Source of the DNA: Caecitellus pseudoparvulus
Lineage: Eukaryota; Protista; Bigyra: Bicosoecida
NCBI GenBank assembly: GCA_965644315.1
Contig: CBFFRQ010000187.1
Span: 1-26,010 of the forward strand
Direction: 5' to 3'
Length of the DNA: 26,010 nt
Below are positions 1,955 through 18,932 of the stretch, in pieces. Below the pieces are notes generated by a model. That model had not been told where the DNA came from and made no database searches. It saw nothing but the letters and a program-made list of their open reading frames with translations. Position numbers and translations under genes: made by a program. How positions within the stretch are numbered: the first letter of the stretch is position 1; each line of letters starts with the position of its first letter.

Positions 1955-1987
1955 GGCATGGAGGCAATCTGCAATGCATTGAGTAGC
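1955..1987 (+). mobile_element. 33-nt stub of element A 3' terminus embedded in the telomere
   Basis: 1956-1987 (GCATGGAGGCAATCTGCAATGCATTGAGTAGC) is identical to 5706-5737 and 8686-8717; flanked by telomeric repeats on both sides. Confidence 0.93.
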
Positions 1988-2785: not shown

Positions 2786-2810
2786 GGCAATCTGCAATGC
2801 ATTGAGTAGC
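2786..2810 (+). mobile_element. 25-nt stub of element A 3' terminus joined via TAAC to the 5' end of copy A1
   Basis: GGCAATCTGCAATGCATTGAGTAGC is identical to 5713-5737. Confidence 0.92.
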
Positions 2811-2814
2811 TAAC

Positions 2815-5737
2815 TTTCCAAATGTCAAGCTAATCACAAGTTGTGAAGTGCTAACATTGCCTAATCCAGGCGCTCGTGCACCCAAGTGTGGTGTTGCACA
2901 GTGCTTGCTGGTTGGGTGGTGCGCACCGGGGCGGGGTAGTGCGAATTCCGCACACCATCGCACCGTGGCTCCCAGTTTGCGCCCTCGGTCGGGGCATGCA
3001 CCTGGGATCGACATCAAAAGCATCATTGACAAGCATCATGAACGCCCAAGTGGATCAAGTCCTGGGGGTCCTCTTCGTGGAGGGGTGCCTGAAGCGCAAG
3101 CAAGTGCTCGGCCCCAGAACAGGTGTCTTCACTGACATGCCACGTCGGGGTGCCGCACGCACCTTCGAGCTTGGAGGACCCCTGCCCAAGACTGATCATG
3201 ATAGTTCATCTTCGGCACGGGACATGTGGCTCGAGGTCTATGGGGAAGCCGCCGAACGGCTGATCCCAGGGCTGAGTGCGGAATTCGGCAACGCCAATGC
3301 GGCCCTGCGCCAGGGACCCACCGGATCGCCAACCATCCTCGTCACGCTCGGAAGTGAGGGTGATTCACCAACAGTGGCACGTCAACTTCGCATTCTTGCT
3401 GCTCAAGAGGACGACTTCGCCATTCGAGTCGGCCAAGGTGGGTTCGTCGCCGTGGCCTACACCAACACCAAGCAGTTCGCATCGGCGAAGGCGAAAGTGA
3501 AGGTGAAGGCCCACCCCACCGCCATCCAAGTGGCCCACCAAGTGACCAAGGAAGCAACCGAAATCGCCTGCCAGTCAGGTGATGTTGCCAAGGTCATGTG
3601 CCTCGTTAGGTCCCACTTCGACCATGGCCCCGTGCCAGCCCAAGCCGTCCGTCCCAGTGTCAGACAATCCGTCCCCTCCGAGGGTGATGCACCTGTCGAC
3701 ACCAAGACACCATCGACCTGGACTGACACTCAGCTCGACAAGGCACCGAAGAAGAAGAAGACCCGTCGAGGCAAGCGAGGAAAGGGCAAGTCAGCCGGAC
3801 GATCCCTCACCTTCGAGGACGTCTTCATCAAGAACGTCCGGCCACCTGCACCTCGACCAACCTCACCACCTGCCACCCAAGGCTCACCCAAAGATACCGT
3901 CACCACCCCTGTGGTGCATGCCATGTTGCCTTCATCAAGGGTGCAGCGGGGCGTCGACCGCAAGTGGCCGTCCCCCACCCCGTCGGGCGAGGCAAGCCCC
4001 GAGGTGCACCGGTATCGGCCGTCTGCAGCAGCAGCATGGGAGGTGATCACAAGGGTGGTGCCTCTTCATGACAGTGTGCGGACACCCGAGCACCTGGCCG
4101 AGTACCCCATCAAGCCTGGCCCTCTGGCCGACCTGCTGTCATCGACCCACGTGTACTCTAACGTGGGGGGCGGGCCTGTGTCCAGGCCTGTCTCGAGACG
4201 GCAGCAGGGGAGAGGGTCTTCGAGGCTGGGGACCTCCTCCTACTCCAGCATGCAGCCACCATCAACGCTGCCCAGCTTGCCTTCAAGCACATGGTCAGGC
4301 AGCTGGAGGGGGTGGTCAGTGACTCGTCCAGCTCGGACATCATGGACGTCGGCCAGAAGCCACCCTCCCCCTTCCGCTCAGACGGGCAACGGGTGGCCGT
4401 CTTCCGCAACATGCTGCACCAGCACTCGCCGGATGACACCTTCCTGGCCCCAGGTACACCACCAGTCCTGCTTCCCGGCCTGCACCTGCTCATCGACCGC
4501 ATCAACCAAGGGTACCGTGCCCCAGCCGGGCATGATGACCTTGGCCAGGCCGGCGTCGACCCCAGCCAGGTTGATGAAGAGGGTGACCAAGAGGGGCACC
4601 TCGACGGAGTGCTGTATGCCTTCGCACTTCGAGAGGTGTGGACCGACAACACGGCCCATCTGCAGCTCATCCTCGTCGACCATGATCGAGGCAAGCTGGT
4701 GCTGTGGAACCCCGACATCCCTGACCTCCATGACGAGCTGCCCCTGCACAAGTGCATGACCCGGCTGGCAGCCGAAGGCATCAACGTCTTGTACCGGATC
4801 TGGACCACACCCGAGGCGGGCAGTCCAGCACCCTTCCGGGACAGGCTTCGAGGGGCACTCCAGTCTCTCCGAGATGACTTGCACCCCCTGCCTCACAAGG
4901 CCACCGACGGCACCGTGCACCCCCAGACCCTCATCGCTGGCAAGGGCACAAGGGTGGCCATGCCTCATGGGCGGATGACCCGACAGCAGGCCGCCACCCT
5001 GGAGGCTGAGGTCAAGGACCCCCTCAAGCGGCTGGTGCCTGAAGACGGCGAGGGTCGCCTGCCCAAGGTCAAGGATGTGCCCCACATCTCGATCGGGCAG
5101 ATGGGTGGACGCCTGATGTAAGTCACCTGTGGGGGCATACTCCCTGTGCCACACATGACTGAAGCTTTGTGTCGCGACCGACGCACATAGCTGACATCGG
5201 ACATTGGAAAGTCCAACCCAACCTCACCATCACCAACCCAACATCGATACCAACACATCAGGACTCGGCTCAGTGGAAGGGGAAGGCACTTGCAGCAAGA
5301 TCTGTGAGGCCGCCCCCAAACCTGAGCCGAAGGGACAGCCGGGCTGGGTCGTGTGCTTGCATCTCAGCAACACCCAGTCCGTGTCGAGTCCATATCCTCC
5401 AGCCCACACCGCCACCCAAGCCAAGCAAGTCGGGTCTCCACCCCTGGACATCGGACCGAGACGGACGAGACTGGACTGGACGGACAAGACAAGAGTGGAC
5501 CGAGACCTGGACCTACACCTCAAGACCATCCCACCGGGGCGGGCGCTGAAGCGCCAAGACAGACGGCGACTTATACAACGGACACGAGTCTGTGCTAGTC
5601 GCAAAGCCGTGCAAGCGGTGCCGTCGTGGTGTCTGTGTCACTGCATTCTGTTGTGGCGCAGGTGGCACCACATGTCCAAGCCCAAGCTGTACCATGATGT
5701 AGCCTGCATGGAGGCAATCTGCAATGCATTGAGTAGC
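2815..5737 (+). mobile_element. Telomere-associated element A, copy 1 (2,923 bp; probable non-autonomous retroelement)
   Basis: Near-identical to 5794-8717; bounded by CTAAC/telomeric repeats; single long ORF plus ~620-nt 3' region; 3' stubs occur elsewhere in the telomere. Confidence 0.88.
3038..5121 (+). pseudogene. Element A ORF, copy 1, split by a 1-nt deletion (G6 vs G7 at 4165-4170); may be a sequencing error
   Basis: ORFs 2876..4759 and 4291..5121 together reproduce the intact ORF of copy 2. Confidence 0.75.
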
Positions 5738-5741
5738 TAAC
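5542..5741 (+). other. Structured 3'-terminal RNA module of element A (hairpins followed by GCUAAC)
   Basis: Stems GGCGC/GCGCC, GCGACT/AGTCGC, CGGAC/GTCTG, GCCGT-GCAA-GCGGT and GTGGTGTC/GGCACCAC are matched by equivalent stems in element B at 11012-11207. Confidence 0.75.
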
Positions 5742-5793
5742 CTAACCCTAACCTAACCCTAACCCTAACCCTAACCCTAACCCTAACCCTAAC
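5738..5793 (+). repeat. Telomeric spacer between A1 and A2 (56 bp, includes two TAACC variants)
   Basis: Direct reading. Confidence 0.97.
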
Positions 5794-8717
5794 TTTCCAA
5801 ATGTCAAGCTAATCACAAGTTGTGAAGTGCTAACATTGCCTAATCCAGGCGCTCGTGCACCCAAGTGTGGTGTTGCACAGTGCTTGCTGGTTGGGTGGTG
5901 CGCACCGGGGCGGGGTAGTGCGAATTCCGCACACCATCGCACCGTGGCTCCCAGTTTGCGCCCTCGGTCGGGGCATGCACCTGGGATCGACATCAAAAGC
6001 ATCATTGACAAGCATCATGAACGCCCAAGTGGATCAAGTCCTGGGGGTCCTCTTCGTGGAGGGGTGCCTGAAGCGCAAGCAAGTGCTCGGCCCCAGAACA
6101 GGTGTCTTCACTGACATGCCACGTCGGGGTGCCGCACGCACCTTCGAGCTTGGAGGACCCCTGCCCAAGACTGATCATGATAGTTCATCTTCGGCACGGG
6201 ACATGTGGCTCGAGGTCTATGGGGAAGCCGCCGAACGGCTGATCCCAGGGCTGAGTGCGGAATTCGGCAACGCCAATGCGGCCCTGCGCCAGGGACCCAC
6301 CGGATCGCCAACCATCCTCGTCACGCTCGGAAGTGAGGGTGATTCACCAACAGTGGCACGTCAACTTCGCATTCTTGCTGCTCAAGAGGACGACTTCGCC
6401 ATTCGAGTCGGCCAAGGTGGGTTCGTCGCCGTGGCCTACACCAACACCAAGCAGTTCGCATCGGCGAAGGCGAAAGTGAAGGTGAAGGCCCACCCCACCG
6501 CCATCCAAGTGGCCCACCAAGTGACCAAGGAAGCAACCGAAATCGCCTGCCAGTCAGGTGATGTTGCCAAGGTCATGTGCCTCGTTAGGTCCCACTTCGA
6601 CCATGGCCCCGTGCCAGCCCAAGCCGTCCGTCCCAGTGTCAGACAATCCGTCCCCTCCGAGGGTGATGCACCTGTCGACACCAAGACACCATCGACCTGG
6701 ACTGACACTCAGCTCGACAAGGCACCGAAGAAGAAGAAGACCCGTCGAGGCAAGCGAGGAAAGGGCAAGTCAGCCGGACGATCCCTCACCTTCGAGGACG
6801 TCTTCATCAAGAACGTCCGGCCACCTGCACCTCGACCAACCTCACCACCTGCCACCCAAGGCTCACCCAAAGATACCGTCACCACCCCTGTGGTGCATGC
6901 CATGTTGCCTTCATCAAGGGTGCAGCGGGGCGTCGACCGCAAGTGGCCGTCCCCCACCCCGTCGGGCGAGGCAAGCCCCGAGGTGCACCGGTATCGGCCG
7001 TCTGCAGCAGCAGCATGGGAGGTGATCACAAGGGTGGTGCCTCTTCATGACAGTGTGCGGACACCCGAGCACCTGGCCGAGTACCCCATCAAGCCTGGCC
7101 CTCTGGCCGACCTGCTGTCATCGACCCACGTGTACTCTAACGTGGGGGGGCGGGCCTGTGTCCAGGCCTGTCTCGAGACGGCAGCAGGGGAGAGGGTCTT
7201 CGAGGCTGGGGACCTCCTCCTACTCCAGCATGCAGCCACCATCAACGCTGCCCAGCTTGCCTTCAAGCACATGGTCAGGCAGCTGGAGGGGGTGGTCAGT
7301 GACTCGTCCAGCTCGGACATCATGGACGTCGGCCAGAAGCCACCCTCCCCCTTCCGCTCAGACGGGCAACGGGTGGCCGTCTTCCGCAACATGCTGCACC
7401 AGCACTCGCCGGATGACACCTTCCTGGCCCCAGGTACACCACCAGTCCTGCTTCCCGGCCTGCACCTGCTCATCGACCGCATCAACCAAGGGTACCGTGC
7501 CCCAGCCGGGCATGATGACCTTGGCCAGGCCGGCGTCGACCCCAGCCAGGTTGATGAAGAGGGTGACCAAGAGGGGCACCTCGACGGAGTGCTGTATGCC
7601 TTCGCACTTCGAGAGGTGTGGACCGACAACACGGCCCATCTGCAGCTCATCCTCGTCGACCATGATCGAGGCAAGCTGGTGCTGTGGAACCCCGACATCC
7701 CTGACCTCCATGACGAGCTGCCCCTGCACAAGTGCATGACCCGGCTGGCAGCCGAAGGCATCAACGTCTTGTACCGGATCTGGACCACACCCGAGGCGGG
7801 CAGTCCAGCACCCTTCCGGGACAGGCTTCGAGGGGCACTCCAGTCTCTCCGAGATGACTTCCCCCCCCTGCCTCACAAGGCCACCGACGGCACCGTGCAC
7901 CCCCAGACCCTCATCGCTGGCAAGGGCACAAGGGTGGCCATGCCTCATGGGCGGATGACCCGACAGCAGGCCGCCACCCTGGAGGCTGAGGTCAAGGACC
8001 CCCTCAAGCGGCTGGTGCCTGAAGACGGCGAGGGTCGCCTGCCCAAGGTCAAGGATGTGCCCCACATCTCGATCGGGCAGATGGGTGGACGCCTGATGTA
8101 AGTCACCTGTGGGGGCATACTCCCTGTGCCACACATGACTGAAGCTTTGTGTCGCGACCGACGCACATAGCTGACATCGGACATTGGAAAGTCCAACCCA
8201 ACCTCACCATCACCAACCCAACATCGATACCAACACATCAGGACTCGGCTCAGTGGAAGGGGAAGGCACTTGCAGCAAGATCTGTGAGGCCGCCCCCAAA
8301 CCTGAGCCGAAGGGACAGCCGGGCTGGGTCGTGTGCTTGCATCTCAGCAACACCCAGTCCGTGTCGAGTCCATATCCTCCAGCCCACACCGCCACCCAAG
8401 CCAAGCAAGTCGGGTCTCCACCCCTGGACATCGGACCGAGACGGACGAGACTGGACTGGACGGACAAGACAAGAGTGGACCGAGACCTGGACCTACACCT
8501 CAAGACCATCCCACCGGGGCGGGCGCTGAAGCGCCAAGACAGACGGCGACTTATACAACGGACACGAGTCTGTGCTAGTCGCAAAGCCGTGCAAGCGGTG
8601 CCGTCGTGGTGTCTGTGTCACTGCATTCTGTTGTGGCGCAGGTGGCACCACATGTCCAAGCCCAAGCTGTACCATGATGTAGCCTGCATGGAGGCAATCT
8701 GCAATGCATTGAGTAGC
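5794..8717 (+). mobile_element. Telomere-associated element A, copy 2 (2,924 bp, intact ORF)
   Basis: Same 5' start (CTAAC|TTTCCAAATG) and 3' end (GAGTAGC|TAAC) as copy 1; I noticed only 3 nt of difference. Confidence 0.88.
6017..8101 (+). CDS. Element A protein (~694 aa from ATG 6017; alternative ATG 5975): basic KKKKTRRGKRGKGK segment, Pro/Ser-rich linker, possible papain-fold C-terminal domain; no RT motifs seen
   Basis: Long uninterrupted ORF with GC3-rich codons, TAA stop. Confidence 0.8.
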   Translation: MNAQVDQVLGVLFVEGCLKRKQVLGPRTGVFTDMPRRGAARTFELGGPLPKTDHDSSSSARDMWLEVYGEAAERLIPGLSAEFGNANAALRQGPTGSPTILVTLGSEGDSPTVARQLRILAAQEDDFAIRVGQGGFVAVAYTNTKQFASAKAKVKVKAHPTAIQVAHQVTKEATEIACQSGDVAKVMCLVRSHFDHGPVPAQAVRPSVRQSVPSEGDAPVDTKTPSTWTDTQLDKAPKKKKTRRGKRGKGKSAGRSLTFEDVFIKNVRPPAPRPTSPPATQGSPKDTVTTPVVHAMLPSSRVQRGVDRKWPSPTPSGEASPEVHRYRPSAAAAWEVITRVVPLHDSVRTPEHLAEYPIKPGPLADLLSSTHVYSNVGGRACVQACLETAAGERVFEAGDLLLLQHAATINAAQLAFKHMVRQLEGVVSDSSSSDIMDVGQKPPSPFRSDGQRVAVFRNMLHQHSPDDTFLAPGTPPVLLPGLHLLIDRINQGYRAPAGHDDLGQAGVDPSQVDEEGDQEGHLDGVLYAFALREVWTDNTAHLQLILVDHDRGKLVLWNPDIPDLHDELPLHKCMTRLAAEGINVLYRIWTTPEAGSPAPFRDRLRGALQSLRDDFPPLPHKATDGTVHPQTLIAGKGTRVAMPHGRMTRQQAATLEAEVKDPLKRLVPEDGEGRLPKVKDVPHISIGQMGGRLM

Positions 8718-8721
8718 TAAC
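8522..8721 (+). other. Structured 3'-terminal RNA module of element A, copy 2
   Basis: Identical to 5542-5741. Confidence 0.75.
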
Positions 8722-8756
8722 CCTAACCCTAACCCTAACCCTAACCCTAACCCTAA
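8718..8756 (+). repeat. Telomeric spacer (6.5 units) capping the truncated 5' end of element B
   Basis: Direct reading. Confidence 0.97.
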
Positions 8757-11201
8757 TCGCCTTCAGCAAGGCCCAGCTGGGGATGCAAAGCTCGCTGGCA
8801 CGCATGCACAACTATGCGAAGCTTGCTGTGTGTGGCGTCTTGCCAACACACATCCGGGCGACGAAACTCCGCAGCAACATCTTCATGAAGCTGCTGAAGA
8901 ATGTCCAAGTGCCCACCCCCATGGCCAAGGCGCTGTCCATCAGCCTGCGCCAAGCCCTGGACCTGCTGCCCTCCCCCCTGGACATGGCCGACATCTTCCT
9001 GGCCAATGTCCGCCTCGACAGGCCAGGCGCTGGAGGCATCCCAGATCCATGGGCCTTACACGGTCTACTCGACCTCTGGCTCCTTGGATGCCTCCCTGAC
9101 CGCGCTCGCCTGGAGGCTGTGTGCCTGGAGCCGCCGCCTGACTCGGCCCCAGACACACACGGGGTCGACATCACCGCTGCGATGGACCCCGCACCCCCCA
9201 AGATCCAGCTGCTTGGACTCGCTGCGGCGGAGTCCTCGGATCTGTCTGAGGCCCCCCAGTTCCCGGACACCACCCCCTGGGCCACTCGGCAACGCGTCGT
9301 CGCCTCCTTCCTTCATGTGGCCCAGACGGTCAAGTGCAGTGCAGTTGGCTACACTCCCACGGGGGAGATGAAGGCCACCAGGCGTCCGAAGGAGTACCAC
9401 ATCGGTGTGGGTGCTCGCTTCGTCGCCTGGCTGCACCCGATCCCTTCCTCTGTGAACCCAGTCTTCTGGGTCCACGAAGGCGATCAGGAGAGACGTGTGA
9501 AGGTGCACCTGTGGCAGACGCTTCAAGTGTTCAACGGGGATGACACCCCTACACTGTTCAGCGCCTGCCCCCTGTGCCACAGCGTCTCGTGGTGCAGCCT
9601 GCAGGAGCACGTCCTTCTTGACTGCCCCCACCACGCCCTGGTCCCTGCGAGAAGGTCCGCCCTGTCCGAGGTGCGGACCTTCCTGTCCAGATCCAATGAT
9701 GCAGTGAGGGGGGTTGCCAACTGCCAGTACCTTGAAGTACCCCCCCCACTGCTGGATGCCGTCGTCCACGCCGACGAAGGCCGCTTGTTGGGCCGCCCGT
9801 GTCGCCTGCTGCTGCTGCGACTGCTGCTGTGCGGCCAGTGGCCCCATCGGTGGGGCCAGCCTCCGGCACAGCAGCCTTGGAGTCCCGAGGCAGCCGCGGT
9901 CCTGAGTAACCCCCATGTCACTCTCCGCGGCTCCTCGGGTCCACTCCGCCCCCCCAAGTACTGGCGCGAGGCCCTGGTAGCCGCCACGGGCCTCGCGGTA
10001 TCTGCGTGGGACGCGGTGGTGACGTGCATGCTCAGTCTTACCTCTCGTGCCGACCGTCACATCCAGAGGCACGCCCGGTACCTCTGGTGGGCGGCGCACG
10101 GGCGAACATGTCCTCTCCCAGGTTACTCGGCTCCTGATCCGAGTACTGTGAGGAAGCATGTGCGGGATGTGAAGACGCGGCGCTTCGAGCGCACTTACTT
10201 CCCTGTCAAGTCCCCTCGTCGGCCGCCTCGCTCCTTCACGAGGCAGGCCACCTTGCTCGACTTCGGGCTGGCACGGCCGGAAGTCCACGAGGAACCTCCG
10301 GCACCGTCGATGTCATCCTCGGCGTCGTCCTCCGGGTCGTCCTTGAAGTGCTCGTCAGACTCTGAGTAGCGGGCGATGTGTGTAGAGCGCGGCGCGGGGC
10401 GGTGCAAGCTTACGGCGTGGCGTGGTGACAACCACGGTCGTGGCTGAGCGAAGTGCAGGTGCGCATGAAGGCGATGTCCTTGATGATGGATGGGACCTGT
10501 GGAAAGTTGGAGAATGTGGTGAAGAATATGTCCAGTATACTTACATGATGGCTCGGGGTCCTTGTGCAGCCCGAGATAGATTCCTGTGACGGAGCGCGCG
10601 GAATTTGGCAGGGTGAACACGCGGGCGCGCGGGGAAACGTCGCAGGCGGGGCGCACAGGTCCTCAGGGCCTTGATTGATGAGTAAGCTGGATTATCTGTG
10701 AAGGAAGGCAGGTGTTCGTGGTGTTCTTGGTTCTCGGGTGGCGTTGTTCCGGCGGTGCGCGCTGCTACCACCGGCGTGGTGCAGTGCAGCACCGTCGTGA
10801 AACGCCACCCGAAGGCGGCCACTGCGGCTCAGGACAGCGCGCAGTGGCCCCAGGCACACGTGCAGTGCCTGGCAAGGGCCAGGAGAAGCGGGGGGTCTCT
10901 GAATTATGAAGCGAAGTGTGGACTGGGACGAAGCAGGAGTGGACCCGGCCCCCTCTGGCTCAGCCGACTGAGCCGAGAGGGCGCGGGAGGGGCAGTTCGA
11001 CACGAATGGGCGGGCGCGGGCGCGCCCTAGCAAGCGGCGGCTCATACAACGGACGTATGTCCGTGATGGCTGCAGACCCACGAGAGTGGGAGCCGCTGTA
11101 GCGCTCCTGGTGTGCCTTGTGCACAGCAGCGAGCGCTACATGTGATGCCCAAGCTGTATCGCGTGCAAGCGTGAAGGCGACATGCAATGCATTAAATGAG
11201 C
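8757..11201 (+). mobile_element. Element B: 5'-truncated non-LTR (LINE-like) retrotransposon attached at the chromosome break
   Basis: ORF is open from the telomere junction; LINE ORF2 C-terminal motifs; 3' end is homologous to element A and ends GAGC|TAACCC. Confidence 0.8.
8759..10369 (+). CDS. C-terminal part of a LINE-type ORF2 (post-RT region with CCHC zinc knuckle); 5'-partial
   Basis: No stop between the junction and ATG 8783; GAGGIPDP (~9026-9048) resembles the post-RT GGLG-P motif; CPLC-x10-HVLLDCP at 9566-9628. Confidence 0.75.
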   Translation, partial: AFSKAQLGMQSSLARMHNYAKLAVCGVLPTHIRATKLRSNIFMKLLKNVQVPTPMAKALSISLRQALDLLPSPLDMADIFLANVRLDRPGAGGIPDPWALHGLLDLWLLGCLPDRARLEAVCLEPPPDSAPDTHGVDITAAMDPAPPKIQLLGLAAAESSDLSEAPQFPDTTPWATRQRVVASFLHVAQTVKCSAVGYTPTGEMKATRRPKEYHIGVGARFVAWLHPIPSSVNPVFWVHEGDQERRVKVHLWQTLQVFNGDDTPTLFSACPLCHSVSWCSLQEHVLLDCPHHALVPARRSALSEVRTFLSRSNDAVRGVANCQYLEVPPPLLDAVVHADEGRLLGRPCRLLLLRLLLCGQWPHRWGQPPAQQPWSPEAAAVLSNPHVTLRGSSGPLRPPKYWREALVAATGLAVSAWDAVVTCMLSLTSRADRHIQRHARYLWWAAHGRTCPLPGYSAPDPSTVRKHVRDVKTRRFERTYFPVKSPRRPPRSFTRQATLLDFGLARPEVHEEPPAPSMSSSASSSGSSLKCSSDSE

Positions 11202-11207
11202 TAACCC
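11012..11207 (+). other. Structured 3'-terminal RNA module of element B
   Basis: Stems GGGCGC/GCGCCC, GCGGCT/GGCTGC, CGGAC/GTCCG, CCCAC-GAGA-GTGGG and TGTAGCGCTC/GAGCGCTACA occur in the same order and with similar spacing as in element A. Confidence 0.75.
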
Positions 11208-12398
11208 GTACCCAAGCATGCCATGAGACCCCAGCCCCCAGCACATGACCCCACCGGACGTCAAGAGCGCACAGCTGTGATCATTCCCGACAGTGATGTG
11301 AGATGCTGTTGCGCCCCCAAGGTCAACAGTCCCAGCAGTTGCCGGGTGCTCATCGTTGCCAATGAACTCGGTGTTGCCGTACCCAAGCTGGCCACTGGAC
11401 CCCGACCCCCAGCACATGACCTCTCCGCTCGTGAGAAGCACGCACGTGTGGCTCTGTCCTGCAGCGACTCGTGCTGCCGCGCGCCCCCCGCCCAAATTAA
11501 CTTGACCTGCAGCAGCAGGGTGCTCGTTGTCACCAATGTGGTTGAAGTTGCTGTATCCGAGCCTGCCAGAGAATGCTGTCCCCCAGCACATGACCCCGCC
11601 GTTCGTCAACACAGCACACGTGTGGCTGTCTCCAGCGGAAACCTGTGCTGCAGCAAGACCTGCACCCAGGTTGACAGCACCTGCAGCAGATGGGTGCTCA
11701 TTGTCACCAATGTTGTTGGTGTTACCATACCCAAGCCGGCCGTTTGATCCAAACCCCCAGCACATAAGCAGCCCAGTTGTCAACACTGCGCACGTGTGGC
11801 TCTTGCCTGCAGACACTTGGGCAGCGGCTGCACCAGAGCCCAAATCAACGGTTCCCGCCGCAGCTGGATCCTCAGAGGCGCCAACGTTCTCCTTATTGCC
11901 GTACCCGAGCTGGCCGGCGATGGAGGAGCCCCAGCACATGACACCTCCGTCATCCAGCACAACACAAGTGTGGCTGCCTCCTGCCGAAACTTGGACCACG
12001 ACAACACCAGCGCCTACGTTCACATTGCCTGCAGTTTCTGGTAGCTCGTTGTCTCCGATGGGGTTCAAGTTCCCGTACCCGAGCTGCCCACTGTAGCCTC
12101 CACCCCAGCATCGCACCTTGCCGTCCGTCACGGCGCAGGTATGCAAGCCGCCGGAAGATAGCTGAGTGTCTTCAACAGACGTGCTCGCCAAGCGGCGATG
12201 AAGGTTGACATCATTCAGCATCAAACTGAGTCCACGAAGTGCAACGTGAGCTTCGGCGCAGCCCAACGTTGCCAGGAAGGCAGCGGAGAGCACCGCGAAA
12301 CGCCACCGGCACGCTGCGCCGGCCCCTGCCCGCTTTGGCAAGTGCGCAGCGCAAGACAGACAGGCGCTAGCGCATTGGTTCATAACATGGGGACCCAT
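11136..12398 (-). CDS. Secreted RCC1/BLIP-II-type repeat protein, truncated in repeat 6 and fused to 22 codons of antisense element B (start uncertain: ATG at 12524, 12398 or 12383)
   Basis: 5.5 repeats of QVSAGxSHTCAVLxxGxVMCWGxxxxGxLGYGN; hydrophobic signal-like segment FAVLSAAFLATLGCAEA; repeat pattern stops at ~11205. Confidence 0.88.
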   Translation of the reverse strand: MGPHVMNQCASACLSCAAHLPKRAGAGAACRWRFAVLSAAFLATLGCAEAHVALRGLSLMLNDVNLHRRLASTSVEDTQLSSGGLHTCAVTDGKVRCWGGGYSGQLGYGNLNPIGDNELPETAGNVNVGAGVVVVQVSAGGSHTCVVLDDGGVMCWGSSIAGQLGYGNKENVGASEDPAAAGTVDLGSGAAAAQVSAGKSHTCAVLTTGLLMCWGFGSNGRLGYGNTNNIGDNEHPSAAGAVNLGAGLAAAQVSAGDSHTCAVLTNGGVMCWGTAFSGRLGYSNFNHIGDNEHPAAAGQVNLGGGRAAARVAAGQSHTCVLLTSGEVMCWGSGSSGQLGYGNTEFIGNDEHPATAGTVDLGGATASHITVGNDHSCALLTSGGVMCWGLGSHGMLGYGLAHLMHCMSPSRLHAIQLGHHM

Positions 12399-13371
12399 GG
12401 CAATGCCAGGCGGCAATGAGGGATGCTGCGTGGGACGCAGCGCGTCCTGAAGAATCCGACACTGCACGTCCTGAAAGCGCTGTTGCCTGATTCGCGCCTG
12501 CGAGTGGTACAGGGAAAAGAGCATGATACATGGACCCTAGTAGTGGTAAAAATGAGAATTCATGTGCAACACAGTGCATCGACAGCACTAGACAAGCATT
12601 GTGGCGCGAGCAGCACGCGTTGACAGCATCTGATGGGCGTTTCACGCGCCATCAAGAAGCGGAGGCGACTCCCGGACTCCCAAGCACGAAAGCCCTTTGA
12701 TATACTTACACAGCAGAACATTGGAGCTACGAGATCTGTCTAAGTCAAAAATGGTACATGCTGCAATGTGCCGATTGTGCCCAGTACCAAAATGAAGCGG
12801 CACGGCCCCCCTTGCTTGGCTGTGACGGGCGTCACCACCCCGCTCGGTCTGCAGCGGCAACCTTCCGCACACCGTGATACAATATGGAGCCTTCAATAGC
12901 CCCGCGTGGGCTACAGAGCAGCAGCGGCTGGGGCGACATGCTGGAGGTGCGTCCCAACAGCCGCCCGATGCAGCACCTCAAGGAAGAGACACCGTGCGCC
13001 CCACGCCGTGCTTCCCCCTCCATCATCATCCCGGGGCCAAAGAGTCCTTCCATTTGGACTACACTTCATAGCTGCCTCTAAAGCTGTCAAGGCCTGGACA
13101 TCGAAGGGCCCAGCTACCTCTCAATAGGCGCTGTAGCAGCCGCTGCATCCACACCCAGTTCAAGGCTGGCAGCATGGTACTCCCGGAATCTCCAGACCTC
13201 AAAACGTGCCACAGGAGCCTCTGTCAGTCTCGCAAGCTCTGCAGCTTGCTGTCTTCAACTGATGATCACGTTCAGCTGCATCATCTGGTCAAAGCCTACA
13301 ACTACTCTTCACAATGCCTCAGCCACCCAGAACTGAACTCTGCGGCCAGGACCGACGACCACATGTAAACA

Positions 13372-14871
13372 TCACCGCCCGCAAGCTGCCCTGAGGAGTA
13401 GAAAATGGCGCCTCCCACTTCTCGTGCTTGTTCCGTACCATGCAGCGTCCTTCCCTGCCTGCAGGGCAGTGTCCCCCGCCAACGCTGCAGCTTCGCGTGG
13501 CATGGCCCGGCTGCCTGTGAGCCCCATCAACTCTCGCATCACGTGCGAGTGGCCATTCCTGCACGCCATGCGGAAGCCCACGTCAGGGCCGTCCCAGCTT
13601 CCCACGTGGACATCCACAGCTTTTTGTCCCGTGAGGGCCAACAGCTCGCGCACCACGTGCACGTGGCCACGCTCACAAGCACTCCGAAAACCAACCTCTG
13701 GCCCAGTCCCATCTGCAACGTGAACATCAATCGCCCCGTCGCCAACCACGCCAAGTAACTCGCGCAGCACGGCCAAGTGGCCAAGGTAGCAAGCCCATCG
13801 GAAGCCATACTCGGGCCCAACTCTGTCTCCCGCGTGGATATCCACCGCATGCTCCGCTGGCAACGCCAACAGCAAACGCACAACGTTTGCGTGGCCATAC
13901 CGGCAAGCGAGCCGAAAGGCAGATTCGGGCCCATCAGCATCCCCTGCATGTACATCCACGGCCAGCTCGCCAGAAAGGGCGAGCAAGTCTCGCACTACTG
14001 TCTCATGTCCTCCTGCACATGCAGATCGAAAGCCAGCTTCAGCCCCTTCCTCGTCACATGCGTGCACGTCTACCTGCCGATCACCAGTGAGAGCCAGCAG
14101 CTCCCGAACTACAGCTTCATGGCCGTGCTGACATGCCCTCCGAAAGCCAGCCTCAGGTCCCTCCCAATCTCCAGCGTGTACGTCCACAACGCGATGGCCT
14201 GTCAGCGCCAGGAGCTCGCGCACCACACCAACATGGCCCCGTGCGCACGCGTACCGAAAGGGGGCCTCAGGCCCATCTTCATCTCCCACATGCACATCAA
14301 TTTCCCGGTCCCCACCAAGCCGCAGCAACACATGCACAACATCCAAGTGGCCGTGCAAGCACGCGGCTCGGAAGGCAGCCTCCGGCCCAGCCGAGTCCCC
14401 AGCGCGCACGTCCACTGCACGCTCGCTGCCGAGACGCAGCAGCTCGCAAACAACATCTAGGTGGCCTTCCGAACTGGCCGCCCGGAAGGCAAACTCAGGC
14501 CCGTCTTCATCCCCAGCGTGCACGTCCACGGTCCTTTCCCCGCTCAGCGCAAGCAGCTCCCGCACCGTCTCCACATGCCCATTCCAGCAAGCCAATCGAA
14601 AACCCGCCTCAGGGCCATTCTCATCACCTGCATGGACATCCAGGCCTGCCTCTTCCTCCACGGCCAGCAGTGCTCGCAACAGGCCAACGTGCCCTGCTCC
14701 ACATGCTCTCAAAAAGCCAGCAGTAATGTCGTCCCCTGTCAGAGCCCCAAGCACAGACTCTGCTCTCGCCTTTGACCCGTGGAGCATGTCCATCAGTGTG
14801 ATTACGTCACCACCTGTGCAGGCAGCCCTCCACTCTCCCACGGCACCGGCATCGTCCGCCTCACTCGCCAT
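13372..14871 (-). CDS. Ankyrin-repeat protein (~10 long repeats of ~39 aa)
   Basis: Repeats of VDVHAGDxxGPExxFRxACxxGHxxVVRELLAL; ATG 14871 (MASEADD); TGA stop. Confidence 0.92.
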   Translation of the reverse strand: MASEADDAGAVGEWRAACTGGDVITLMDMLHGSKARAESVLGALTGDDITAGFLRACGAGHVGLLRALLAVEEEAGLDVHAGDENGPEAGFRLACWNGHVETVRELLALSGERTVDVHAGDEDGPEFAFRAASSEGHLDVVCELLRLGSERAVDVRAGDSAGPEAAFRAACLHGHLDVVHVLLRLGGDREIDVHVGDEDGPEAPFRYACARGHVGVVRELLALTGHRVVDVHAGDWEGPEAGFRRACQHGHEAVVRELLALTGDRQVDVHACDEEGAEAGFRSACAGGHETVVRDLLALSGELAVDVHAGDADGPESAFRLACRYGHANVVRLLLALPAEHAVDIHAGDRVGPEYGFRWACYLGHLAVLRELLGVVGDGAIDVHVADGTGPEVGFRSACERGHVHVVRELLALTGQKAVDVHVGSWDGPDVGFRMACRNGHSHVMRELMGLTGSRAMPREAAALAGDTALQAGKDAAWYGTSTRSGRRHFLLLRAACGR

Positions 14872-15381
14872 GGCGTTGCGGCGCAGATTCCGCACATGTG
14901 GCCTCGATGCACCTCCGCGCTGTGGAAGGAACAAGGCTCCAGCAGGCCGATCAGGGTGAAATTCTAAGTTGCACTTTCACACTCCAGTTGTGAACATGAA
15001 CGGCACCTGGGCTTCCGCGTTTTCGTTACGCACTGTAACTGCTCCAAGTGTCAGCCGAGGCAGTGGCGTCAGCTGCCCCTCGTGCCTATCGCCTCGTGCT
15101 GCCTCCAAAGCTCCTTCGAGCTGGACCGTTCACTCTCTTTTCAAATCAAACACCTTCATGGTCCTCTAGAGATCGCTCCACTTCCTAGTCTTTGCCGAGA
15201 TCAGTTGCACGTCGCAAGACTATCTGTGCAAGTTTCCGTTCGGCATCGGCAGTGCTCCAAGGAGCAAAGATGTAATCACAGCTTGTCGACCTCACGTGAA
15301 TGGAAATGTGCCTGCCACCAAGCCAGGCAAACTAGTGTGTGCATTTTGCAGCCCATGTCACCCTCTCTTTCCTTTCCTTTA

Positions 15382-17979
15382 TCAAGAGCGAGCAATGGCA
15401 GGGCCGACGGCCAAGGGCGACTTGGTGCGAGTGGCTGGGGTCGCCACTCTCGAGTCCTCTGCTTCCTGGCGCAGGCCAGCTTCCCGCACCATGGCCACAT
15501 CACGCGAGAGGGCGATTGCCTTATCCACAGAAATGCAGCTGCCGAGCGCAATGCAGGCCGCTGCGCTCCTGCGTGGTCCAAACGTGCAGCACCAGAGGCC
15601 TGGGTGTGGGACGTGCTTCAGGTGTGAATGCGTCGGCGATTGCTGCAGGTACAGCTTCAGCCAGTCAAAGACTGCAACGTGCCGCGAACGCAGGGTGGCG
15701 ACGCCTGCGCCGAGCAGGAGGAGGAAGGTCATGGCCAAGAACAGCGTGTTTGCGAGGAAGATGGCGCCCTGCAGCAGGAACTCCGTCTTCTCCCCGACCA
15801 GTAGTTCGTCGCCCAGCGCCAGGCCTCCGAAGGCAGACACACAAATGGCGGTCAGTGCTGCGGTTTCCACAGCATTCATCAGCGTGGCCTCGTACGGCAA
15901 GGATGCGACATGGACGACAAGGGAAGCTGACAGCACGAGGCAGATCAGCGCTGCTTGCAGCTCGGCATTGCGCACAGTGACAGCGACTGCAGCAAGGAGC
16001 ACTTTCCGTGGCAGCACAACCAGCAACTCCCAGTACCAGAAGTTGGGCTCGTCTTCTTCTTTGCGGGGAGAGTCCTCAGAGTGCGCACGGGGAATTCTGA
16101 ACCCTTCATACACCGCACCGTACACTGCCTTCACGCTGTGCTTGTAGACATGGTGCCTGTGGCGGCATACGAGACAGGCGCTGCCGACCGGGATGCCGAC
16201 GCCCCACACCAGCAAGCCAAGGTATGCTGCGAGCTGGGCGGTCTGGAACATGGAGTCCATGCTTCCGTGTGCGACATCTGAACGGAGGAACAGGAAGCCC
16301 AGGATGCGGAAGTCGTACGTGTCCAGCATGCGCAGACATGCCTCGACTACAGGGAAGTGCACCAGCAAGAGCAGGATGAAGGCTGCGCGATACGCTTGCT
16401 CAGCACACCTCGCCCGCTGCTTGAAGAGGTCCACAGTCTTTGCCAGCACAGCTTTCTCCTCAGAGCGCATGCTTGCAGGGTGGGCCGGCGGTGCGCCAGG
16501 CATCACAGCTGCTTCAACCTGCGCTGCCGCCTGGCTGCGGCTTGATCGCGGCTTGCGCATGTCAATGACGACTGAGCCTTCCGACTCTTCATCAGCCTCG
16601 GCCAGGTCGTCCAAGTCAGCCCACGCAGATGTCCGTCTCGCTGCTGGAGATGGGTCGGTCGGGCCTGTGTCGTCTTGGAATGAGGTGGACCTTGGAACCA
16701 GCGCGGAAGGTCTGGAAGTTGGAGACACCAGGGTCTTTGGCGCAGGGAAGGCGAACGTATCATCAACCAGAGCACCCTCTTTCTTGGGAGGAGTGGAAGC
16801 GGCAAGGGGCTGTGGAGCCACTGCTCCAGACTCGGCAACGCCTTCCCCGCCAACTGAGCCCCCGCCCTTCTCCTCAGCATACCTCTCAGCAGCAGCCTGC
16901 AGCACTGCGTGGCTTTGCCGCTGCAATATGCTGGTCACACCCGCTACGATCAACGGAATGCTCACTGCAGCAATGGGTATGCTCAAGGTGATGAAGAAGC
17001 GAGTGTACATGTCTGTGCGCATGGCACACTGGGCAGGCACCGAGTTGGTGCTGACGCCGACCGACACTGAGGAGAGCCACGCCATGATGCCATCCAACGC
17101 GCTTTCAGGAGGCAAGCGTGTACTCAACAGCACAGCATACATCTGGGCCCAACCAGTCATGACACGGAACACCCCAATGAGCAGTCCCCTGCTTTGACCC
17201 TCCTTGCTTTCCCGATCACTCGTGCGCAGGGCCAAGTACACGAGGAGCCCCGTGAACAAAACCCAGGAGCCGATGCTCTGCAGGAAGCCGAAGGTGTCGT
17301 TGGGACACTTTACACAAAGCAGCTGTGGGCTGGACCTTGCCCAGCCTTCAGCACACTCGCCACAGAGGATGCCCCTGTGCCCAGGCACACAGGAGATGCC
17401 ACTCGAGTTCGCTACAGGCCTGCACGCATCTGGAGGCGTGCACTGAAGGATGCTCGCACCAGCGTAAAGAACCGCTTTCCCTGGGACTGCGGCCTGCAAC
17501 TCAGTTGTCTCATTCACAAGTGCTTGCAGACGCCGTCTCGCGGGCGAATCAGCGCTGGTTGTGTCACCCTGCAACTCGGCACCTGCCACATCTTTCAGCT
17601 TGCTCCAGTACCTTTCCTGCAGCTTGGGGTGTGATGGCACCATGGACGCATCGGTCACGCAGGTATCACACCAGAAACCCGGGCGAGGCCTGAACTGCCC
17701 AGCAGCGCAGCTGACGCCGTTCAAGGGGCACTGCAAGCACTTGGTCTGGGCCAGGTTGGCGAAGGTGCCGCCAGGGCACTGCGTGCATGCAGCCTCTTGG
17801 TTTTCAACATTGGCACGGATTGTTCCAGGAGGGCAGCGTTCACAGCGAAGCCCAAAAGTGTCATTGGTGCTCTGGCGGCGCTGCCAGCCAGTAGCACAAA
17901 TGCAGTCCATCTGCGAGTCAGCTAGCACCTCGCTGTCGGTGCGGCACGTTGGGCTCACAACCACAGCAGGCACAGCCAC
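15382..17979 (-). CDS. C-terminal part of a large membrane protein: Cys-rich (CxxCPPG, GCC2/GCC3-like) repeats followed by a multi-pass TM domain
   Basis: 865-aa ORF with CERCPPGT, CTQCPGGTF and CVPGHRGILCGEC, then many hydrophobic helices and WYWELLVVLPRK; frame stays open upstream to at least ~18060. Confidence 0.85.
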   Translation of the reverse strand: MAVPAVVVSPTCRTDSEVLADSQMDCICATGWQRRQSTNDTFGLRCERCPPGTIRANVENQEAACTQCPGGTFANLAQTKCLQCPLNGVSCAAGQFRPRPGFWCDTCVTDASMVPSHPKLQERYWSKLKDVAGAELQGDTTSADSPARRRLQALVNETTELQAAVPGKAVLYAGASILQCTPPDACRPVANSSGISCVPGHRGILCGECAEGWARSSPQLLCVKCPNDTFGFLQSIGSWVLFTGLLVYLALRTSDRESKEGQSRGLLIGVFRVMTGWAQMYAVLLSTRLPPESALDGIMAWLSSVSVGVSTNSVPAQCAMRTDMYTRFFITLSIPIAAVSIPLIVAGVTSILQRQSHAVLQAAAERYAEEKGGGSVGGEGVAESGAVAPQPLAASTPPKKEGALVDDTFAFPAPKTLVSPTSRPSALVPRSTSFQDDTGPTDPSPAARRTSAWADLDDLAEADEESEGSVVIDMRKPRSSRSQAAAQVEAAVMPGAPPAHPASMRSEEKAVLAKTVDLFKQRARCAEQAYRAAFILLLLVHFPVVEACLRMLDTYDFRILGFLFLRSDVAHGSMDSMFQTAQLAAYLGLLVWGVGIPVGSACLVCRHRHHVYKHSVKAVYGAVYEGFRIPRAHSEDSPRKEEDEPNFWYWELLVVLPRKVLLAAVAVTVRNAELQAALICLVLSASLVVHVASLPYEATLMNAVETAALTAICVSAFGGLALGDELLVGEKTEFLLQGAIFLANTLFLAMTFLLLLGAGVATLRSRHVAVFDWLKLYLQQSPTHSHLKHVPHPGLWCCTFGPRRSAAACIALGSCISVDKAIALSRDVAMVREAGLRQEAEDSRVATPATRTKSPLAVGPAIARS

Positions 17980-18059
17980 TGCACCTCGTGAGAGATAAGG
18001 ATATATGGCTTCCCAGAGATAGAGGATGTGAACAGTGTAGTTTGTGGCTGAGATGGTTG

Positions 18060-18932
18060 GACTTGCAGCACGGCACGCCCTTCGTCCAGGGCCGCGAGCC
18101 CGACAGTCAGGTCGGGTTCGCCGGTCACTAAATGGCGCACTTGCGGTAACTCAACGAGGGACTCCACTTCGCGACTTGCGGCATCTCGTGCTTCAAGCAG
18201 GAGCGTTACTTGCTGTCGCCCAGCCACAATCATTGCGCTTCCACTCGCTGAGGCATCCATCATGGACATGTTGCGTTGCCCACTCAAAGCTGATTGAATG
18301 GTGATCACTTCGCGATCAGCGCGTTTGGGCCACGAAACGGCATCGGGCAGCATGAATCTACTCGTGTGCGAGAACGCCCCTCCACCGCGCACCTGCACCC
18401 GCACTGGGATAGCCCGGAATTCTTCGTACGCAGCCAGCGCGGCCACGTCCGTCGCACCTGGCGCACCTTCTGCCACGGATGCAGTGATGCGCACCAGGAT
18501 TGTTGCCGCAAGCTCTCCGCTACCGCACAGAAGCCCTGGGGGTGGCCGTGGCCCAAGACACAGCTCACCCCCATGCACAACGCCGGCAGGCACCACCAGT
18601 TGCCCAGTGGAAGCAGGCAGCACGAGCTCATGCTTCGGTGTGGTTGTTTGCAGCCATGTGGCTGTGGACGAGGTGCCCTGCGACGGAACCACTTGCACGT
18701 GTAGATCAGCAACGGATGCCAACGTTTGCAGGATGGCAATGCCGGAGGCTTCCTGGCTCGGCGCCACTGTCAGCGACACGGTGCCAGGGACCACGGAAAG
18801 CAGCGTGGGGCGCATGGTCACCGGCAGCACATGATCAAGCTGCCCAGCTTTGGACTTGGCATCATACTCATTCGTGCGCAAGCGCAGGGTGCTCGAAAAC
18901 AGCCCGCTGACAGCTGCGCCTGGAGAGAACAA
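18060..18932 (-). CDS. Middle segment (beta-rich Ig-like/filamin-like) of the same large membrane-protein gene
   Basis: Long ORF of beta-strand character; changes frame relative to the downstream segment near 18050-18075. Confidence 0.65.

What the first reader, a model, noticed from the sequence alone, without database searches (positions are those of the whole stretch)
11136..11230. Broken chromosome healed by element B inside an RCC1-repeat gene
Each of the first five RCC1 repeats continues LGY(G/S)N, but the sixth reads MLGYG-LAHLMH. At this point the sequence is GAGC-TAACCC-GTACCC: B's 3' end meets the gene through one telomeric hexamer whose CC(C) overlaps the Gly codon. No distal part of the gene appears in the window. 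Inference: a terminal deletion exposed a GG(G)-3' end that primed reverse transcription directly on B RNA through 2-3 nt of pairing, so the element rather than a long telomerase tract was added first. The gene gained a 22-aa element-derived tail and stop codon.
Basis: partly seen in the sequence, partly recalled or inferred. Interest (0 to 1): 0.85.

Follow-up and report, generated by a model that had tools for sequence, protein, structure and literature searches.

The report
Retrotransposon-capped chromosome break inside a gene
At this chromosome end a surface-protein gene lost its far end, and the stump is joined, base to base, to the tail of a telomere-specific jumping gene, one of many such caps in this protist genome that also has normal telomerase telomeres.

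Summary
The RCC1-repeat ORF (11136-12524, minus strand) has five LGY(G/S)N blades. The sixth breaks after LGYG and runs 22 codons through the antisense of element B to a stop. Five near-identical paralogues (96-98%) continue in frame to a 728-aa protein. Their homology to the window stops at 11206-11209, exactly where B reaches its canonical 3' end (…GCTAAC, 11200-11205). No base is left unassigned, and the "telomeric hexamer" is TAAC from B plus CC from the gene.

B is the 2.45-kb 3' part of a 7.75-kb non-LTR retrotransposon with an AP-endonuclease and a reverse transcriptase. It has at least 40 copies, most near contig ends with their 3' ends pointing inward. In 64 sampled element 3' junctions, 21 abut non-telomeric DNA with no full telomere repeat. 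Two other RCC1 paralogues are truncated the same way, one through a non-telomeric 3-nt microhomology. Both ends of this B copy are unique in the assembly, and no orphan distal gene piece exists.

The best reading is a terminal loss capped by reverse transcription primed on the exposed chromosome 3' end. This looks like a new variant of a known kind (HeT-A/TART, Athena, L1 end capping), here in a telomerase-positive stramenopile-like protist.

The parts
1..2785 (+). Terminal telomere, (TAACCC)n with the C-rich strand on top, which marks a left chromosome end. It is interrupted by short element 3' stubs (about 1955-1990) and an odd 14-nt insert at about 2712-2728.
   Evidence: One search found 466 TAACCC against about 10 expected. 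Searches show the interruptions. C-runs are 434/436 canonical.
2786..2814 (+). A 29-nt stub of element A's 3' end, joined directly to the 5' end of a full A copy.
2815..5741 (+). Element A copy 1, an ORF1-only partner element that ends ...GTAGCTAAC.
   Evidence: The ORF of the near-identical A copy 2 is 42% identical to B ORF1 (E=6e-149).
5742..5793 (+). Short internal telomere tract of about 8 repeats between the A copies.
5794..8721 (+). Element A copy 2, near-identical to copy 1.
8722..8756 (+). Short internal telomere tract of about 6 repeats, added onto the 5'-truncated end of B.
   Evidence: The 5' junction 23-mer is unique in the genome.
8757..11205 (+). Element B, the 5'-truncated 2.45-kb 3' part of a 7.75-kb AP-endonuclease plus RT non-LTR retrotransposon. 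It ends at its canonical 3' terminus ...AATGAGCTAAC.
   Evidence: One search gives 96.2% identity to L013:5555-8003. One search finds RVT_1 at 7.5e-30 and Exo_endo_phos at 1.7e-7 in the full-length copy. Searches cover the other copies.
11206..11207 (.). The CC/GG dinucleotide at the join. It is homologous to the gene (GG of the Gly codon in paralogue L017) and also matches the CC that usually follows CTAAC at element ends, so it is the possible pairing site.
11136..11204 (-). The 22-codon tail plus stop of the chimeric ORF, read from the antisense of B's 3' end.
11206..12524 (-). 3'-truncated RCC1-repeat gene holding residues 1-440 of a 728-aa family. It keeps 5.5 of 7 blades and has lost the Ser/Thr/Pro-rich stalk and the transmembrane anchor.
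11206..22177 (.). Subtelomeric block. The gene end (to about 14026) matches five paralogous ends at 96-97%, and 14000 onward is shared by at least 10 chromosome ends at 93-94% to varying depths. Its proximal edge is an old element 3' end.
21425..22177 (+). Old fragment of an F-family element whose 3' end (…ACAATGCATTGAACTTCCT) abuts chromosome-unique DNA at 22178. This marks an earlier capped end.

Best explanation
The window is a left chromosome end of a telomerase-positive, stramenopile-like protist. A subtelomeric copy of an RCC1-propeller surface-protein gene lost everything distal to Gly440, either by a break or by complete telomere erosion. The exposed 3' end of the G-rich strand (…GGGTACGG-3') served as primer for reverse transcription of a B-element RNA, starting at or within 1-3 nt of the RNA's 3' terminus (…GAGCUAAC(CC)). 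Synthesis stopped 2.45 kb in, giving the 5' truncation. Telomerase then added about 6 repeats, an A element was added, then about 8 repeats, another A and an A stub, and finally a 2.7-kb telomere.

Shown by sequence:
- The break point coincides to the base with the canonical terminus of B.
- No filler bases lie at the join.
- The orientation fits priming from the chromosome end.
- B is 5'-truncated.
- Both ends of this B copy are unique in the assembly.
- Direct junctions recur genome-wide.

Inferred: that the free end, rather than an endonuclease nick, was the primer; that base pairing guided the start; and that the chimeric 462-aa ORF is probably a dead or secreted remnant.
For: Gene truncation:
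- Paralogues continue in frame to 728 aa, with 7 LGY blades, a stalk and a transmembrane segment.
- Homology to the window ends at 11206-11209.
- No orphan distal part exists.

Element identity:
- B is 96% identical to the 3' 2.45 kb of a 7.75-kb element with RVT_1 and Exo_endo_phos domains.
- At least 40 copies exist, most near contig ends with the 3' end inward.
- Both junctions of this copy are unique, as expected for one retrotransposition event.

Genome-wide pattern:
- Of 64 distinct 3' junctions, 21 have no more than CTAACCC before non-telomeric DNA, and 45 have at most 3 repeat units.
- Element-to-element joins occur with no telomere repeat at all.
- The register at the element/telomere boundary varies. 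The first C-run is non-canonical in 19/43 junctions against 18/118 later runs (Fisher p=2.5e-4). This argues against a fixed endonuclease nick.

Independent examples:
- The C43 paralogue is truncated at a different codon and joined to a D-family end that lacks its last AAC, through a TCT overlap. Telomerase cannot make that junction.
- The C19 RCC1 gene and the C41 copy of the same block are also capped by elements.

Telomerase is present: a TERT RNA-binding domain gives E=7e-21 in a 1389-aa open frame.

The predicted fold leaves the last 5-16 nt of the B RNA unpaired.
Against: - No reads, second assembly or transcript data could be examined.
- Full-length B has every AP-endonuclease catalytic motif, so endonuclease-dependent events are possible.
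- The overlap (1-3 nt, G/C) is also what telomerase seeds or end-joining would use.
- The B copy is about 4-5% diverged from most other copies, so the event may be old and later changes cannot be excluded.
Confidence: 0.7

Rival explanations
1. Telomerase acted first. The broken end was seeded by telomerase, and B was later inserted by its AP endonuclease into the most proximal repeat, so the element was not the first thing added.
For: - TERT is present.
- B has an intact-looking endonuclease.
- Many other junctions do carry 2 to more than 20 repeats.
- G-ending stumps are good telomerase seeds, and in Magnaporthe 19 of 24 healings used 1-4 nt seeds (PMC7367193).
Against: - No base at the junction is left for telomerase. 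CTAAC is element-intrinsic, as shown by element-element joins with no repeats, and CC is gene-homologous.
- Insertion would have to hit the very first repeat in a third of all junctions.
- SART1 needs at least 3 repeats (PMC7265360).
- The TCT junction in C43 cannot come from telomerase.
Confidence: 0.1
2. The element caused the break. The B endonuclease nicked inside the intact gene, reverse transcription began, second-strand joining failed, and the distal chromosome part was lost, with telomerase healing the cDNA end.
For: - The AP-endonuclease motifs are intact.
- The outcome would look identical to what is seen.
- Transposon-induced end instability is documented for MoTeRs (PMC7367193).
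Against: - The gene sequence at the break (GGGTACGG|CAAC) is not telomere-like beyond GG.
- No sampled copy shows a completed non-terminal insertion with both target halves, although the few internal motif hits were not examined for this.
- This reading needs an extra failure step.
Confidence: 0.08
3. DNA-level capture. An acentric terminal fragment broken at the fragile repeat tract next to B's 3' end was ligated to the broken gene, or the array was copied by break-induced replication, with no new reverse transcription.
For: - Interstitial telomere tracts are known breakage sites (PMC7367193).
- Subtelomeric blocks here are clearly exchanged among at least 10 ends.
- 1-3 nt overlaps fit end joining.
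Against: - Both the 5'-truncation junction and the 3' junction of this B copy are unique in the assembly, so no donor exists.
- Break-induced replication needs homology, which is absent at the gene/B join.
- Two simultaneous breaks are required.
Confidence: 0.07
4. Assembly artefact. A chimeric join of a B-containing read set with an RCC1-gene read set produced the junction.
For: - Both flanks are multi-copy.
- Reads could not be checked.
- Contig C138 shows a suspicious gene-to-(CCCTAA)n join in the wrong orientation.
Against: - A misjoin would fall inside shared repeat sequence, not exactly at the element's canonical last base with zero filler.
- The same junction grammar is seen at dozens of other ends.
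- Flank divergence of 3-5% from paralogues gives assemblers unique anchors.
Confidence: 0.05

Closest known systems
Drosophila HeT-A / TART / TAHRE telomeric retrotransposons (healing of broken ends, Biessmann et al. 1990, as cited in PMC4700185 and PMC5537684)
   Same: - Head-to-tail arrays at chromosome ends with the 3' end toward the centromere.
- A two-component system, with an ORF1-only element (A) alongside an autonomous RT element (B).
- Direct addition to non-telomeric broken ends, truncating genes.
   Different: - Telomerase and perfect TTAGGG arrays coexist here.
- Elements end in a telomere-complementary CTAACC tail rather than oligo(A).
- The RT is very divergent (best database hit 32% over 26% of its length), and its clade is undetermined.
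Endonuclease-deficient Penelope-like elements Athena/Coprina and rotifer Terminons (Gladyshev & Arkhipova 2007; PMC6431247)
   Same: - The 3' end carries a short reverse-complement telomere repeat after a folded 3' region, proposed to pair with the G-overhang.
[quoted passage not shown]
- Host genes are caught in subterminal arrays.
   Different: - The RT here is LINE-type (RVT_1; best PDB matches R2 and L1).
- An AP endonuclease is present.
- There is no hammerhead ribozyme or any other Rfam match.
Bombyx SART1/TRAS1 (R1 clade) telomere-repeat-specific LINEs (PMC7265360)
   Same: These are AP-endonuclease plus RT LINEs living in telomerase-made telomere repeats.
   Different: - SART1 needs at least 3 repeats and a poly(A) tail and inserts at a fixed site.
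- Here 35 of 64 junctions have fewer than 3 repeat units, the register varies, and there is no poly(A).
Endonuclease-independent L1 retrotransposition at dysfunctional telomeres and breaks (Morrish et al. 2007, recalled from memory; topic reviewed in PMC4700185)
   Same: A LINE RT uses a free chromosomal 3' end as primer with 0-few nt of microhomology, and 5'- and 3'-truncated products occur (compare the C43 junction lacking AAC).
   Different: In L1 this is a rare laboratory pathway in repair-deficient cells. Here it appears to be a routine germ-line outcome of specialised elements.
Fungal MoTeR / FoTeR telomeric retrotransposons (PMC7367193, PMC12857005)
   Same: Telomere-embedded autonomous and non-autonomous pairs, with short telomere tracts at 3' ends (FoTeR has 3-7 repeats) and truncated copies.
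   Different: - They belong to the CRE clade, whose elements use a restriction-like endonuclease (PMC10088271, PMC4640811).
- Naked ends in Magnaporthe are healed by telomerase, break-induced replication or end joining rather than by direct element addition.

Membership tests
Non-LTR (LINE) retrotransposon with AP endonuclease | Reverse transcriptase domain of LINE type | tested here: met
   RVT_1 at E=7.5e-30 in L013 ORF 4451-7165. Best PDB matches are R2Bm at 6e-17 and L1 ORF2p at 2e-11.
Non-LTR (LINE) retrotransposon with AP endonuclease | AP-type endonuclease with catalytic motifs | tested here: met
   Exo_endo_phos at E=1.7e-7. The motifs WNV, LCLTE, GDLNC, LDH and SDH are present in the translation. 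Activity was not tested.
Non-LTR (LINE) retrotransposon with AP endonuclease | Variable 5' truncation with a constant 3' end | tested here: met
   The window copy starts at position 5555 of 7750. Other copies start at query positions 33, 183, 327, 532, 697 and so on, all with the same 3' end.
Non-LTR (LINE) retrotransposon with AP endonuclease | Target-site duplication flanking insertions | not testable with these tools
   The 5' flank of every sampled copy is telomere repeat or another element, so no duplicated target can be defined.
Telomere-specialised retrotransposons (functional class) | Location restricted to chromosome ends, one orientation, head-to-tail arrays | tested here: met
   The 3' motif has 146 hits against 0 in the control. 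Nearly all element-type hits lie within about 30 kb of contig ends, plus strand at contig starts and minus strand at contig ends. One F-family copy is internal (C18:155 kb).
SART/TRAS-type repeat-specific insertion | Needs several telomere repeats, fixed insertion register, poly(A) tail | tested here: not met
   21 of 64 junctions have no full repeat, the register is variable (19/43 non-canonical first C-run), and there is no poly(A). Phylogenetic placement was not tested.
Endonuclease-deficient Penelope-like elements (Athena/Coprina) | PLE-type RT, no endonuclease, 3' hammerhead ribozyme | tested here: not met
   An AP endonuclease is present, there is no Rfam hammerhead, and the RT matches LINE RTs. 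Only the telomere-complementary 3' tail is shared.
RCC1-like seven-bladed propeller proteins | Seven RCC1 repeats closing a propeller | tested here: not met
   The window copy keeps 5 complete LGY(G/S)N blades plus half of the sixth. The intact paralogue has 7. The domain assignment itself is secure (WD40_RLD 1.5e-54).

The most novel reading that the evidence does not exclude
In this protist a family of AP-endonuclease-bearing LINEs cooperates with telomerase. The family has at least seven 3'-end types and includes an ORF1-only partner, A, and all types end in a single-stranded telomere-complementary tail. These elements would form a routine chromosome-end repair system that caps fully eroded or broken, repeat-free ends by priming on the free 3' end. 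That would make it a living intermediate between telomerase telomeres and Drosophila-type retrotransposon telomeres, evolved independently in a stramenopile-like lineage.
Probability: 0.4. Interest if true: 0.8.

Novelty: new variant of a known kind. Interest (0 to 1): 0.65.

Why it matters
Healing of broken chromosome ends by retrotransposons is classically a Drosophila peculiarity linked to the loss of telomerase. Telomere-tailed elements that pair with the G-overhang were known only from endonuclease-free Penelope-like elements.

Here an endonuclease-bearing LINE family with a telomere-complementary tail sits in the telomeres of a telomerase-positive protist. It repeatedly caps repeat-free stumps, destroying subtelomeric surface-protein genes as it does so. 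If confirmed with reads and experiments, it offers three things:
- a tractable natural system to ask how LINE reverse transcriptases and telomerase share chromosome ends;
- a test of the long-standing idea that retrotransposon telomeres arose from telomere-targeting LINEs acting as a back-up;
- an explanation of how subtelomeric gene families are eroded and reshuffled.

Tried and rejected
- **Reads.** No read or RNA evidence was obtained.
- **Independent assemblies.** Exact-protein look-up of the chimeric ORF found nothing. An exact junction 34-mer in metagenome contigs found nothing. A scan for RT relatives in metagenomes found nothing.
- **Organism identity.** HSP90 places it nearest oomycetes and diatoms at 73-75%. 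A 99% match exists only in an unnamed ENA metagenome. The taxon remains unnamed.
- **Homology searches.** The RT search gave only distant LINE hits, so the clade is not assigned. The RCC1 search gave only about 50%-identical, mostly bacterial-type RCC1 proteins and no orthologue with the same end.
- **Rfam.** No family matched, including hammerhead.
- **Literature.** No telomeric retrotransposon of stramenopiles turned up in the held library.
- **The shorter form is the natural gene end.** Rejected: the paralogues continue the repeat pattern, and the tail is antisense B sequence.
- **Ordinary internal insertion.** Rejected: no distal gene part exists anywhere.
- **The TAACCC hexamer is a telomerase product.** Rejected as unnecessary: TAAC is element-intrinsic and CC is gene-homologous.
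Full report
**1. What is there**

The window is contig C187:1-26010 of a 30.6-Mb, 215-contig assembly. It begins with 2.7 kb of perfect (TAACCC)n: 466 hexamers against about 10 expected, with 434 of 436 C-runs canonical. This is a left chromosome end.

Reading inward, the elements are:
- a 29-nt stub of element A's 3' end (2786-2814);
- a full A copy (2815-5741);
- about 8 telomere repeats;
- a second near-identical A copy (5794-8721);
- about 6 repeats;
- element B (8757-11205);
- immediately after B, an RCC1-repeat ORF on the minus strand (11136-12524).

All larger host ORFs from 11 to 25 kb lie on the minus strand, pointing at the telomere.

**2.

The ORF translation has five blades ending QLGYGN, QLGYGN, RLGYGN, RLGYSN and QLGYGN. 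The sixth reads MLGYG and then LAHLMHCMSPSRLHAIQLGHHM-stop, a 22-aa tail. Pfam gives RCC1-like domain E=1.5e-54.

A six-frame search of the organism's own genome found near-identical paralogues (96-98% protein identity) on C138, C28, C107, C114 and C163. These match residues 1-439/440 and then continue in frame. The intact form (L018:407-2593, 728 aa) has these parts:
- a hydrophobic N-terminal signal or anchor;
- seven LGY blades;
- a long Ser/Thr/Pro-rich stalk;
- a transmembrane segment and a short tail.

It looks like a surface glycoprotein.

At the DNA level, homology between window and paralogues stops at 11206-11209. The closest paralogue at that point, L017, reads GGGTACGG|CAACACC where the window reads GGGTACGG|GTTAGCTC. 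The distal 0.9 kb of the gene occurs only attached to the longer copies. There is no orphan piece, and only weak internal-repeat echoes appear in the window. The junction 23-mer occurs once in the assembly.

**3. What element B is**

The last 806 nt of B recur at 40 or more places. Most are a few kb from contig starts (plus strand) or contig ends (minus strand).

Between two such 3' ends on C30 lies a 7.75-kb full-length copy (L013:251-8003). The window's B equals its last 2.45 kb at 96% identity, so it is a 5'-truncated copy.

The full copy encodes:
- an 882-aa ORF1;
- an AP-endonuclease domain (Exo_endo_phos, E=1.7e-7) with the WNV, LCLTE, GDLNC, LDH and SDH motifs all present;
- a reverse transcriptase (RVT_1, E=7.5e-30).

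The RT is LINE-like (PDB R2Bm 6e-17, L1 ORF2p 2e-11) but very divergent. Its best hit among 5.8 billion proteins is 32% identical over 26% of its length.

Element A encodes only a homologue of B's ORF1 (42% identity, E=6e-149). It shares B's 5' leader (75%) and its 3' motif. A and B therefore resemble the HeT-A/TART or MoTeR2/MoTeR1 kind of pair.

The genome also has a TERT gene (Telomerase_RBD, E=7e-21, 1389-aa open frame).

HSP90 places the organism nearest oomycetes and diatoms (73-75%). A 99% match exists only in an unnamed metagenome. I therefore call it a stramenopile-like protist and cannot name it.

**4. Anatomy of the junction**

Other B copies end …AATGA(A/G)CTAAC. After that come anything from zero to more than 20 telomere repeats. 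Element-to-element joins with no repeat at all occur, for example …GTAGCTAAC|TTTCCAAATG in the window at 2814/2815 and on C12 and C43. These show that CTAAC belongs to the element itself.

In the window, GCTAAC occupies 11200-11205 and the gene-homologous sequence begins at 11206. No base is unassigned.

Because most element ends continue CC after CTAAC, the gene's terminal GG could have paired with the RNA's terminal CC. The overlap is 1-3 nt, depending on where the RNA ended and on whether the ancestral codon was GGC or GGG. The predicted fold of the last 118 nt leaves the final 5-16 nt unpaired. This is weak support only.

**5. The junction is one of a population**

A 13-nt motif shared by all element 3' ends (TGCAATGCATTRA) hits 146 places against 0 for the reversed control. 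I fetched 60 of these hits and, together with earlier loci and the window, classified 64 distinct element 3' junctions from at least seven 3'-tail types. The results are:
- 21 junctions have at most CTAACCC before non-telomeric sequence, which is the window's class and the largest one;
- 45 have at most three repeat units;
- only 9 exceed five units.

Where telomere repeats do follow, the first C-run is non-canonical (2, 4 or 5 C) in 19 of 43 junctions. The figure is 18 of 118 for later runs (Fisher p=2.5e-4) and 2 of 436 for the terminal telomere. This variable register is what joining of an RNA 3' end to chromosome termini with 0-3 nt of overlap predicts. It is not what a fixed endonuclease nick predicts. 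For comparison, SART1 needs at least three repeats and inserts at one position (PMC7265360).

**6. Independent parallel events**

- **C43.** Another paralogue of the same gene is cut at a different codon (equivalent to window 11422). It is joined to a D-family end that lacks its final AAC. All paralogues read …GACCTCTC|CGCTCG there, the element normally ends …ACTGTCTAAC, and the junction reads …ACTGTCTC|CGCTCG. This is a 3-nt TCT overlap in non-telomeric sequence, which telomerase cannot have produced.
- **C19.** A more distant RCC1 gene is cut after …DPSAAGAV by a D-family end.
- **C41.** The same subtelomeric block is cut deeper (equivalent to window 17030) and capped by a B copy with two repeats.
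- **C138.** The block is cut about 170 nt downstream of the position where the intact paralogue's gene ends, and capped by an E-family stub.

The block from window 14000 to about 22180 is shared, to varying depths, by at least 10 ends at 93-94% identity. Its proximal boundary is an old F-family 3' end abutting unique DNA at 22178. The history of this end therefore appears to be an old cap, then acquisition of the block (probably by recombination or break-induced replication), then loss into the RCC1 gene, then the B cap.

**7. Mechanism and rivals**

The most economical reading (about 0.7) is terminal loss followed by reverse transcription of B RNA primed on the free chromosomal 3' end, then alternating telomerase and element additions.

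The orientation fits: the sense strand runs with the C-strand and the 3' end points inward. The 5' truncation, the uniqueness of both ends of this B copy, the absence of filler and the genome-wide junction spectrum also fit.

The rivals, in order:
- **Telomerase seed first, then endonuclease insertion into the first repeat (0.1).** No base is left for telomerase, and a third of all junctions would have to hit the first repeat.
- **Endonuclease nick inside the intact gene with failed completion, so the element caused the loss (0.08).** The endonuclease looks intact, so this is not excluded.
- **DNA-level capture of a terminal fragment, or break-induced replication (0.07).** No donor with this B copy exists.

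Whether the 462-aa chimeric ORF is expressed is unknown. It lacks 1.5 blades, the stalk and the anchor, so it is most likely a dead remnant.

**8. Comparison with known systems**

The behaviour matches four known cases:
- Drosophila HeT-A/TART healing of broken ends (PMC4700185, PMC5537684);
- endonuclease-independent L1 capping of dysfunctional telomeres;
- the telomere-complementary 3' tails of Athena/Coprina Penelope-like elements and Terminons (PMC6431247);
- the array architecture of MoTeR/FoTeR (PMC7367193, PMC12857005).

It is not a member of the Penelope-like group, because it has an AP endonuclease, a LINE-type RT and no hammerhead. It does not behave like SART/TRAS either. Its LINE clade was not determined.

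The review lists I read name telomeric retrotransposons only from insects, Chlorella, Giardia, fungi, a lizard and rotifers (PMC10088271). No stramenopile example turned up in the literature searches.

I rate the finding a new variant of a known kind. The single junction is a textbook-style healing event. The interest lies in its setting: a telomerase-positive protist, endonuclease-bearing LINEs with telomere-complementary tails, and direct capping as the commonest junction class.

**9. Handling notes**

- Telomere-repeat stretches were searched only inside the window and the organism's own genome.
- The one pattern sent to a public collection contained a single hexamer within the junction.

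Noticed in passing
window 2815-8721; L013:276-2924: Element A (2.93 kb, two near-identical tandem copies) encodes only a homologue of B's ORF1 (42% identity, E=6e-149). It shares B's 5' leader and 3' motif, so it looks like an ORF1-only partner presumably mobilised by B-type RT, as HeT-A is by TART.
   Followed up: partly
L017 (G000:C138:1-3419), junction at about 2323: Another RCC1 paralogue, on the plus strand, is cut inside its Ser/Thr/Pro stalk and runs straight into about 1 kb of (CCCTAA)n. This is the wrong strand orientation for telomerase healing. It is either a break-to-telomere fusion or capture, or a chimeric contig end.
   Followed up: partly
window 21425-22177, with unique DNA from 22178: An old F-family element 3' end (…ACAATGCATTGAACTTCCT) marks the proximal edge of the 11-kb subtelomeric block. 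The block is shared, to varying depths, by at least 10 chromosome ends at 93-94%, and C114 and C28 share it right up to this edge. This suggests the blocks spread by recombination seeded in old element remnants.
   Followed up: partly
L018:1-237 (G000:C28, also C107 and C114 contig ends): An AT-rich segment with a roughly 100-nt near-perfect inverted repeat lies about 170 nt downstream of the intact RCC1 gene, and three contigs stop there. It could be a foreign mobile element or a foldback that breaks the assembly.
   Followed up: no
window 2712-2728 and about 1955-1990: A 14-nt non-telomeric insert (CAGAAAGGAGGGAA) and a short element 3'-end stub (motif at 1971-1982) lie inside the terminal telomere array.
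   Followed up: no
all element 3' ends, e.g. window 11184-11195, 8701-8712, 5721-5732: Every element family shares TGCAATGCATTRA, which contains the perfect 10-nt palindrome CAATGCATTG, 4-7 nt before the CTAAC terminus. It could be a protein-binding or RNA-dimerisation site. There are 146 genome hits against 0 in the control.
   Followed up: partly
genome-wide: RCC1-repeat domains occur in dozens of very long uninterrupted frames (2,000-8,000 aa). The domain is most similar (about 50%) to bacterial-type secreted RCC1 proteins. This is a large, possibly horizontally acquired, surface-protein family.
   Followed up: no
G000:C18:155162 (L042): An F-family 3' end with two telomere repeat units lies 155 kb inside a 1.35-Mb contig. 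It could be a relic of an ancient chromosome end or fusion.
   Followed up: no
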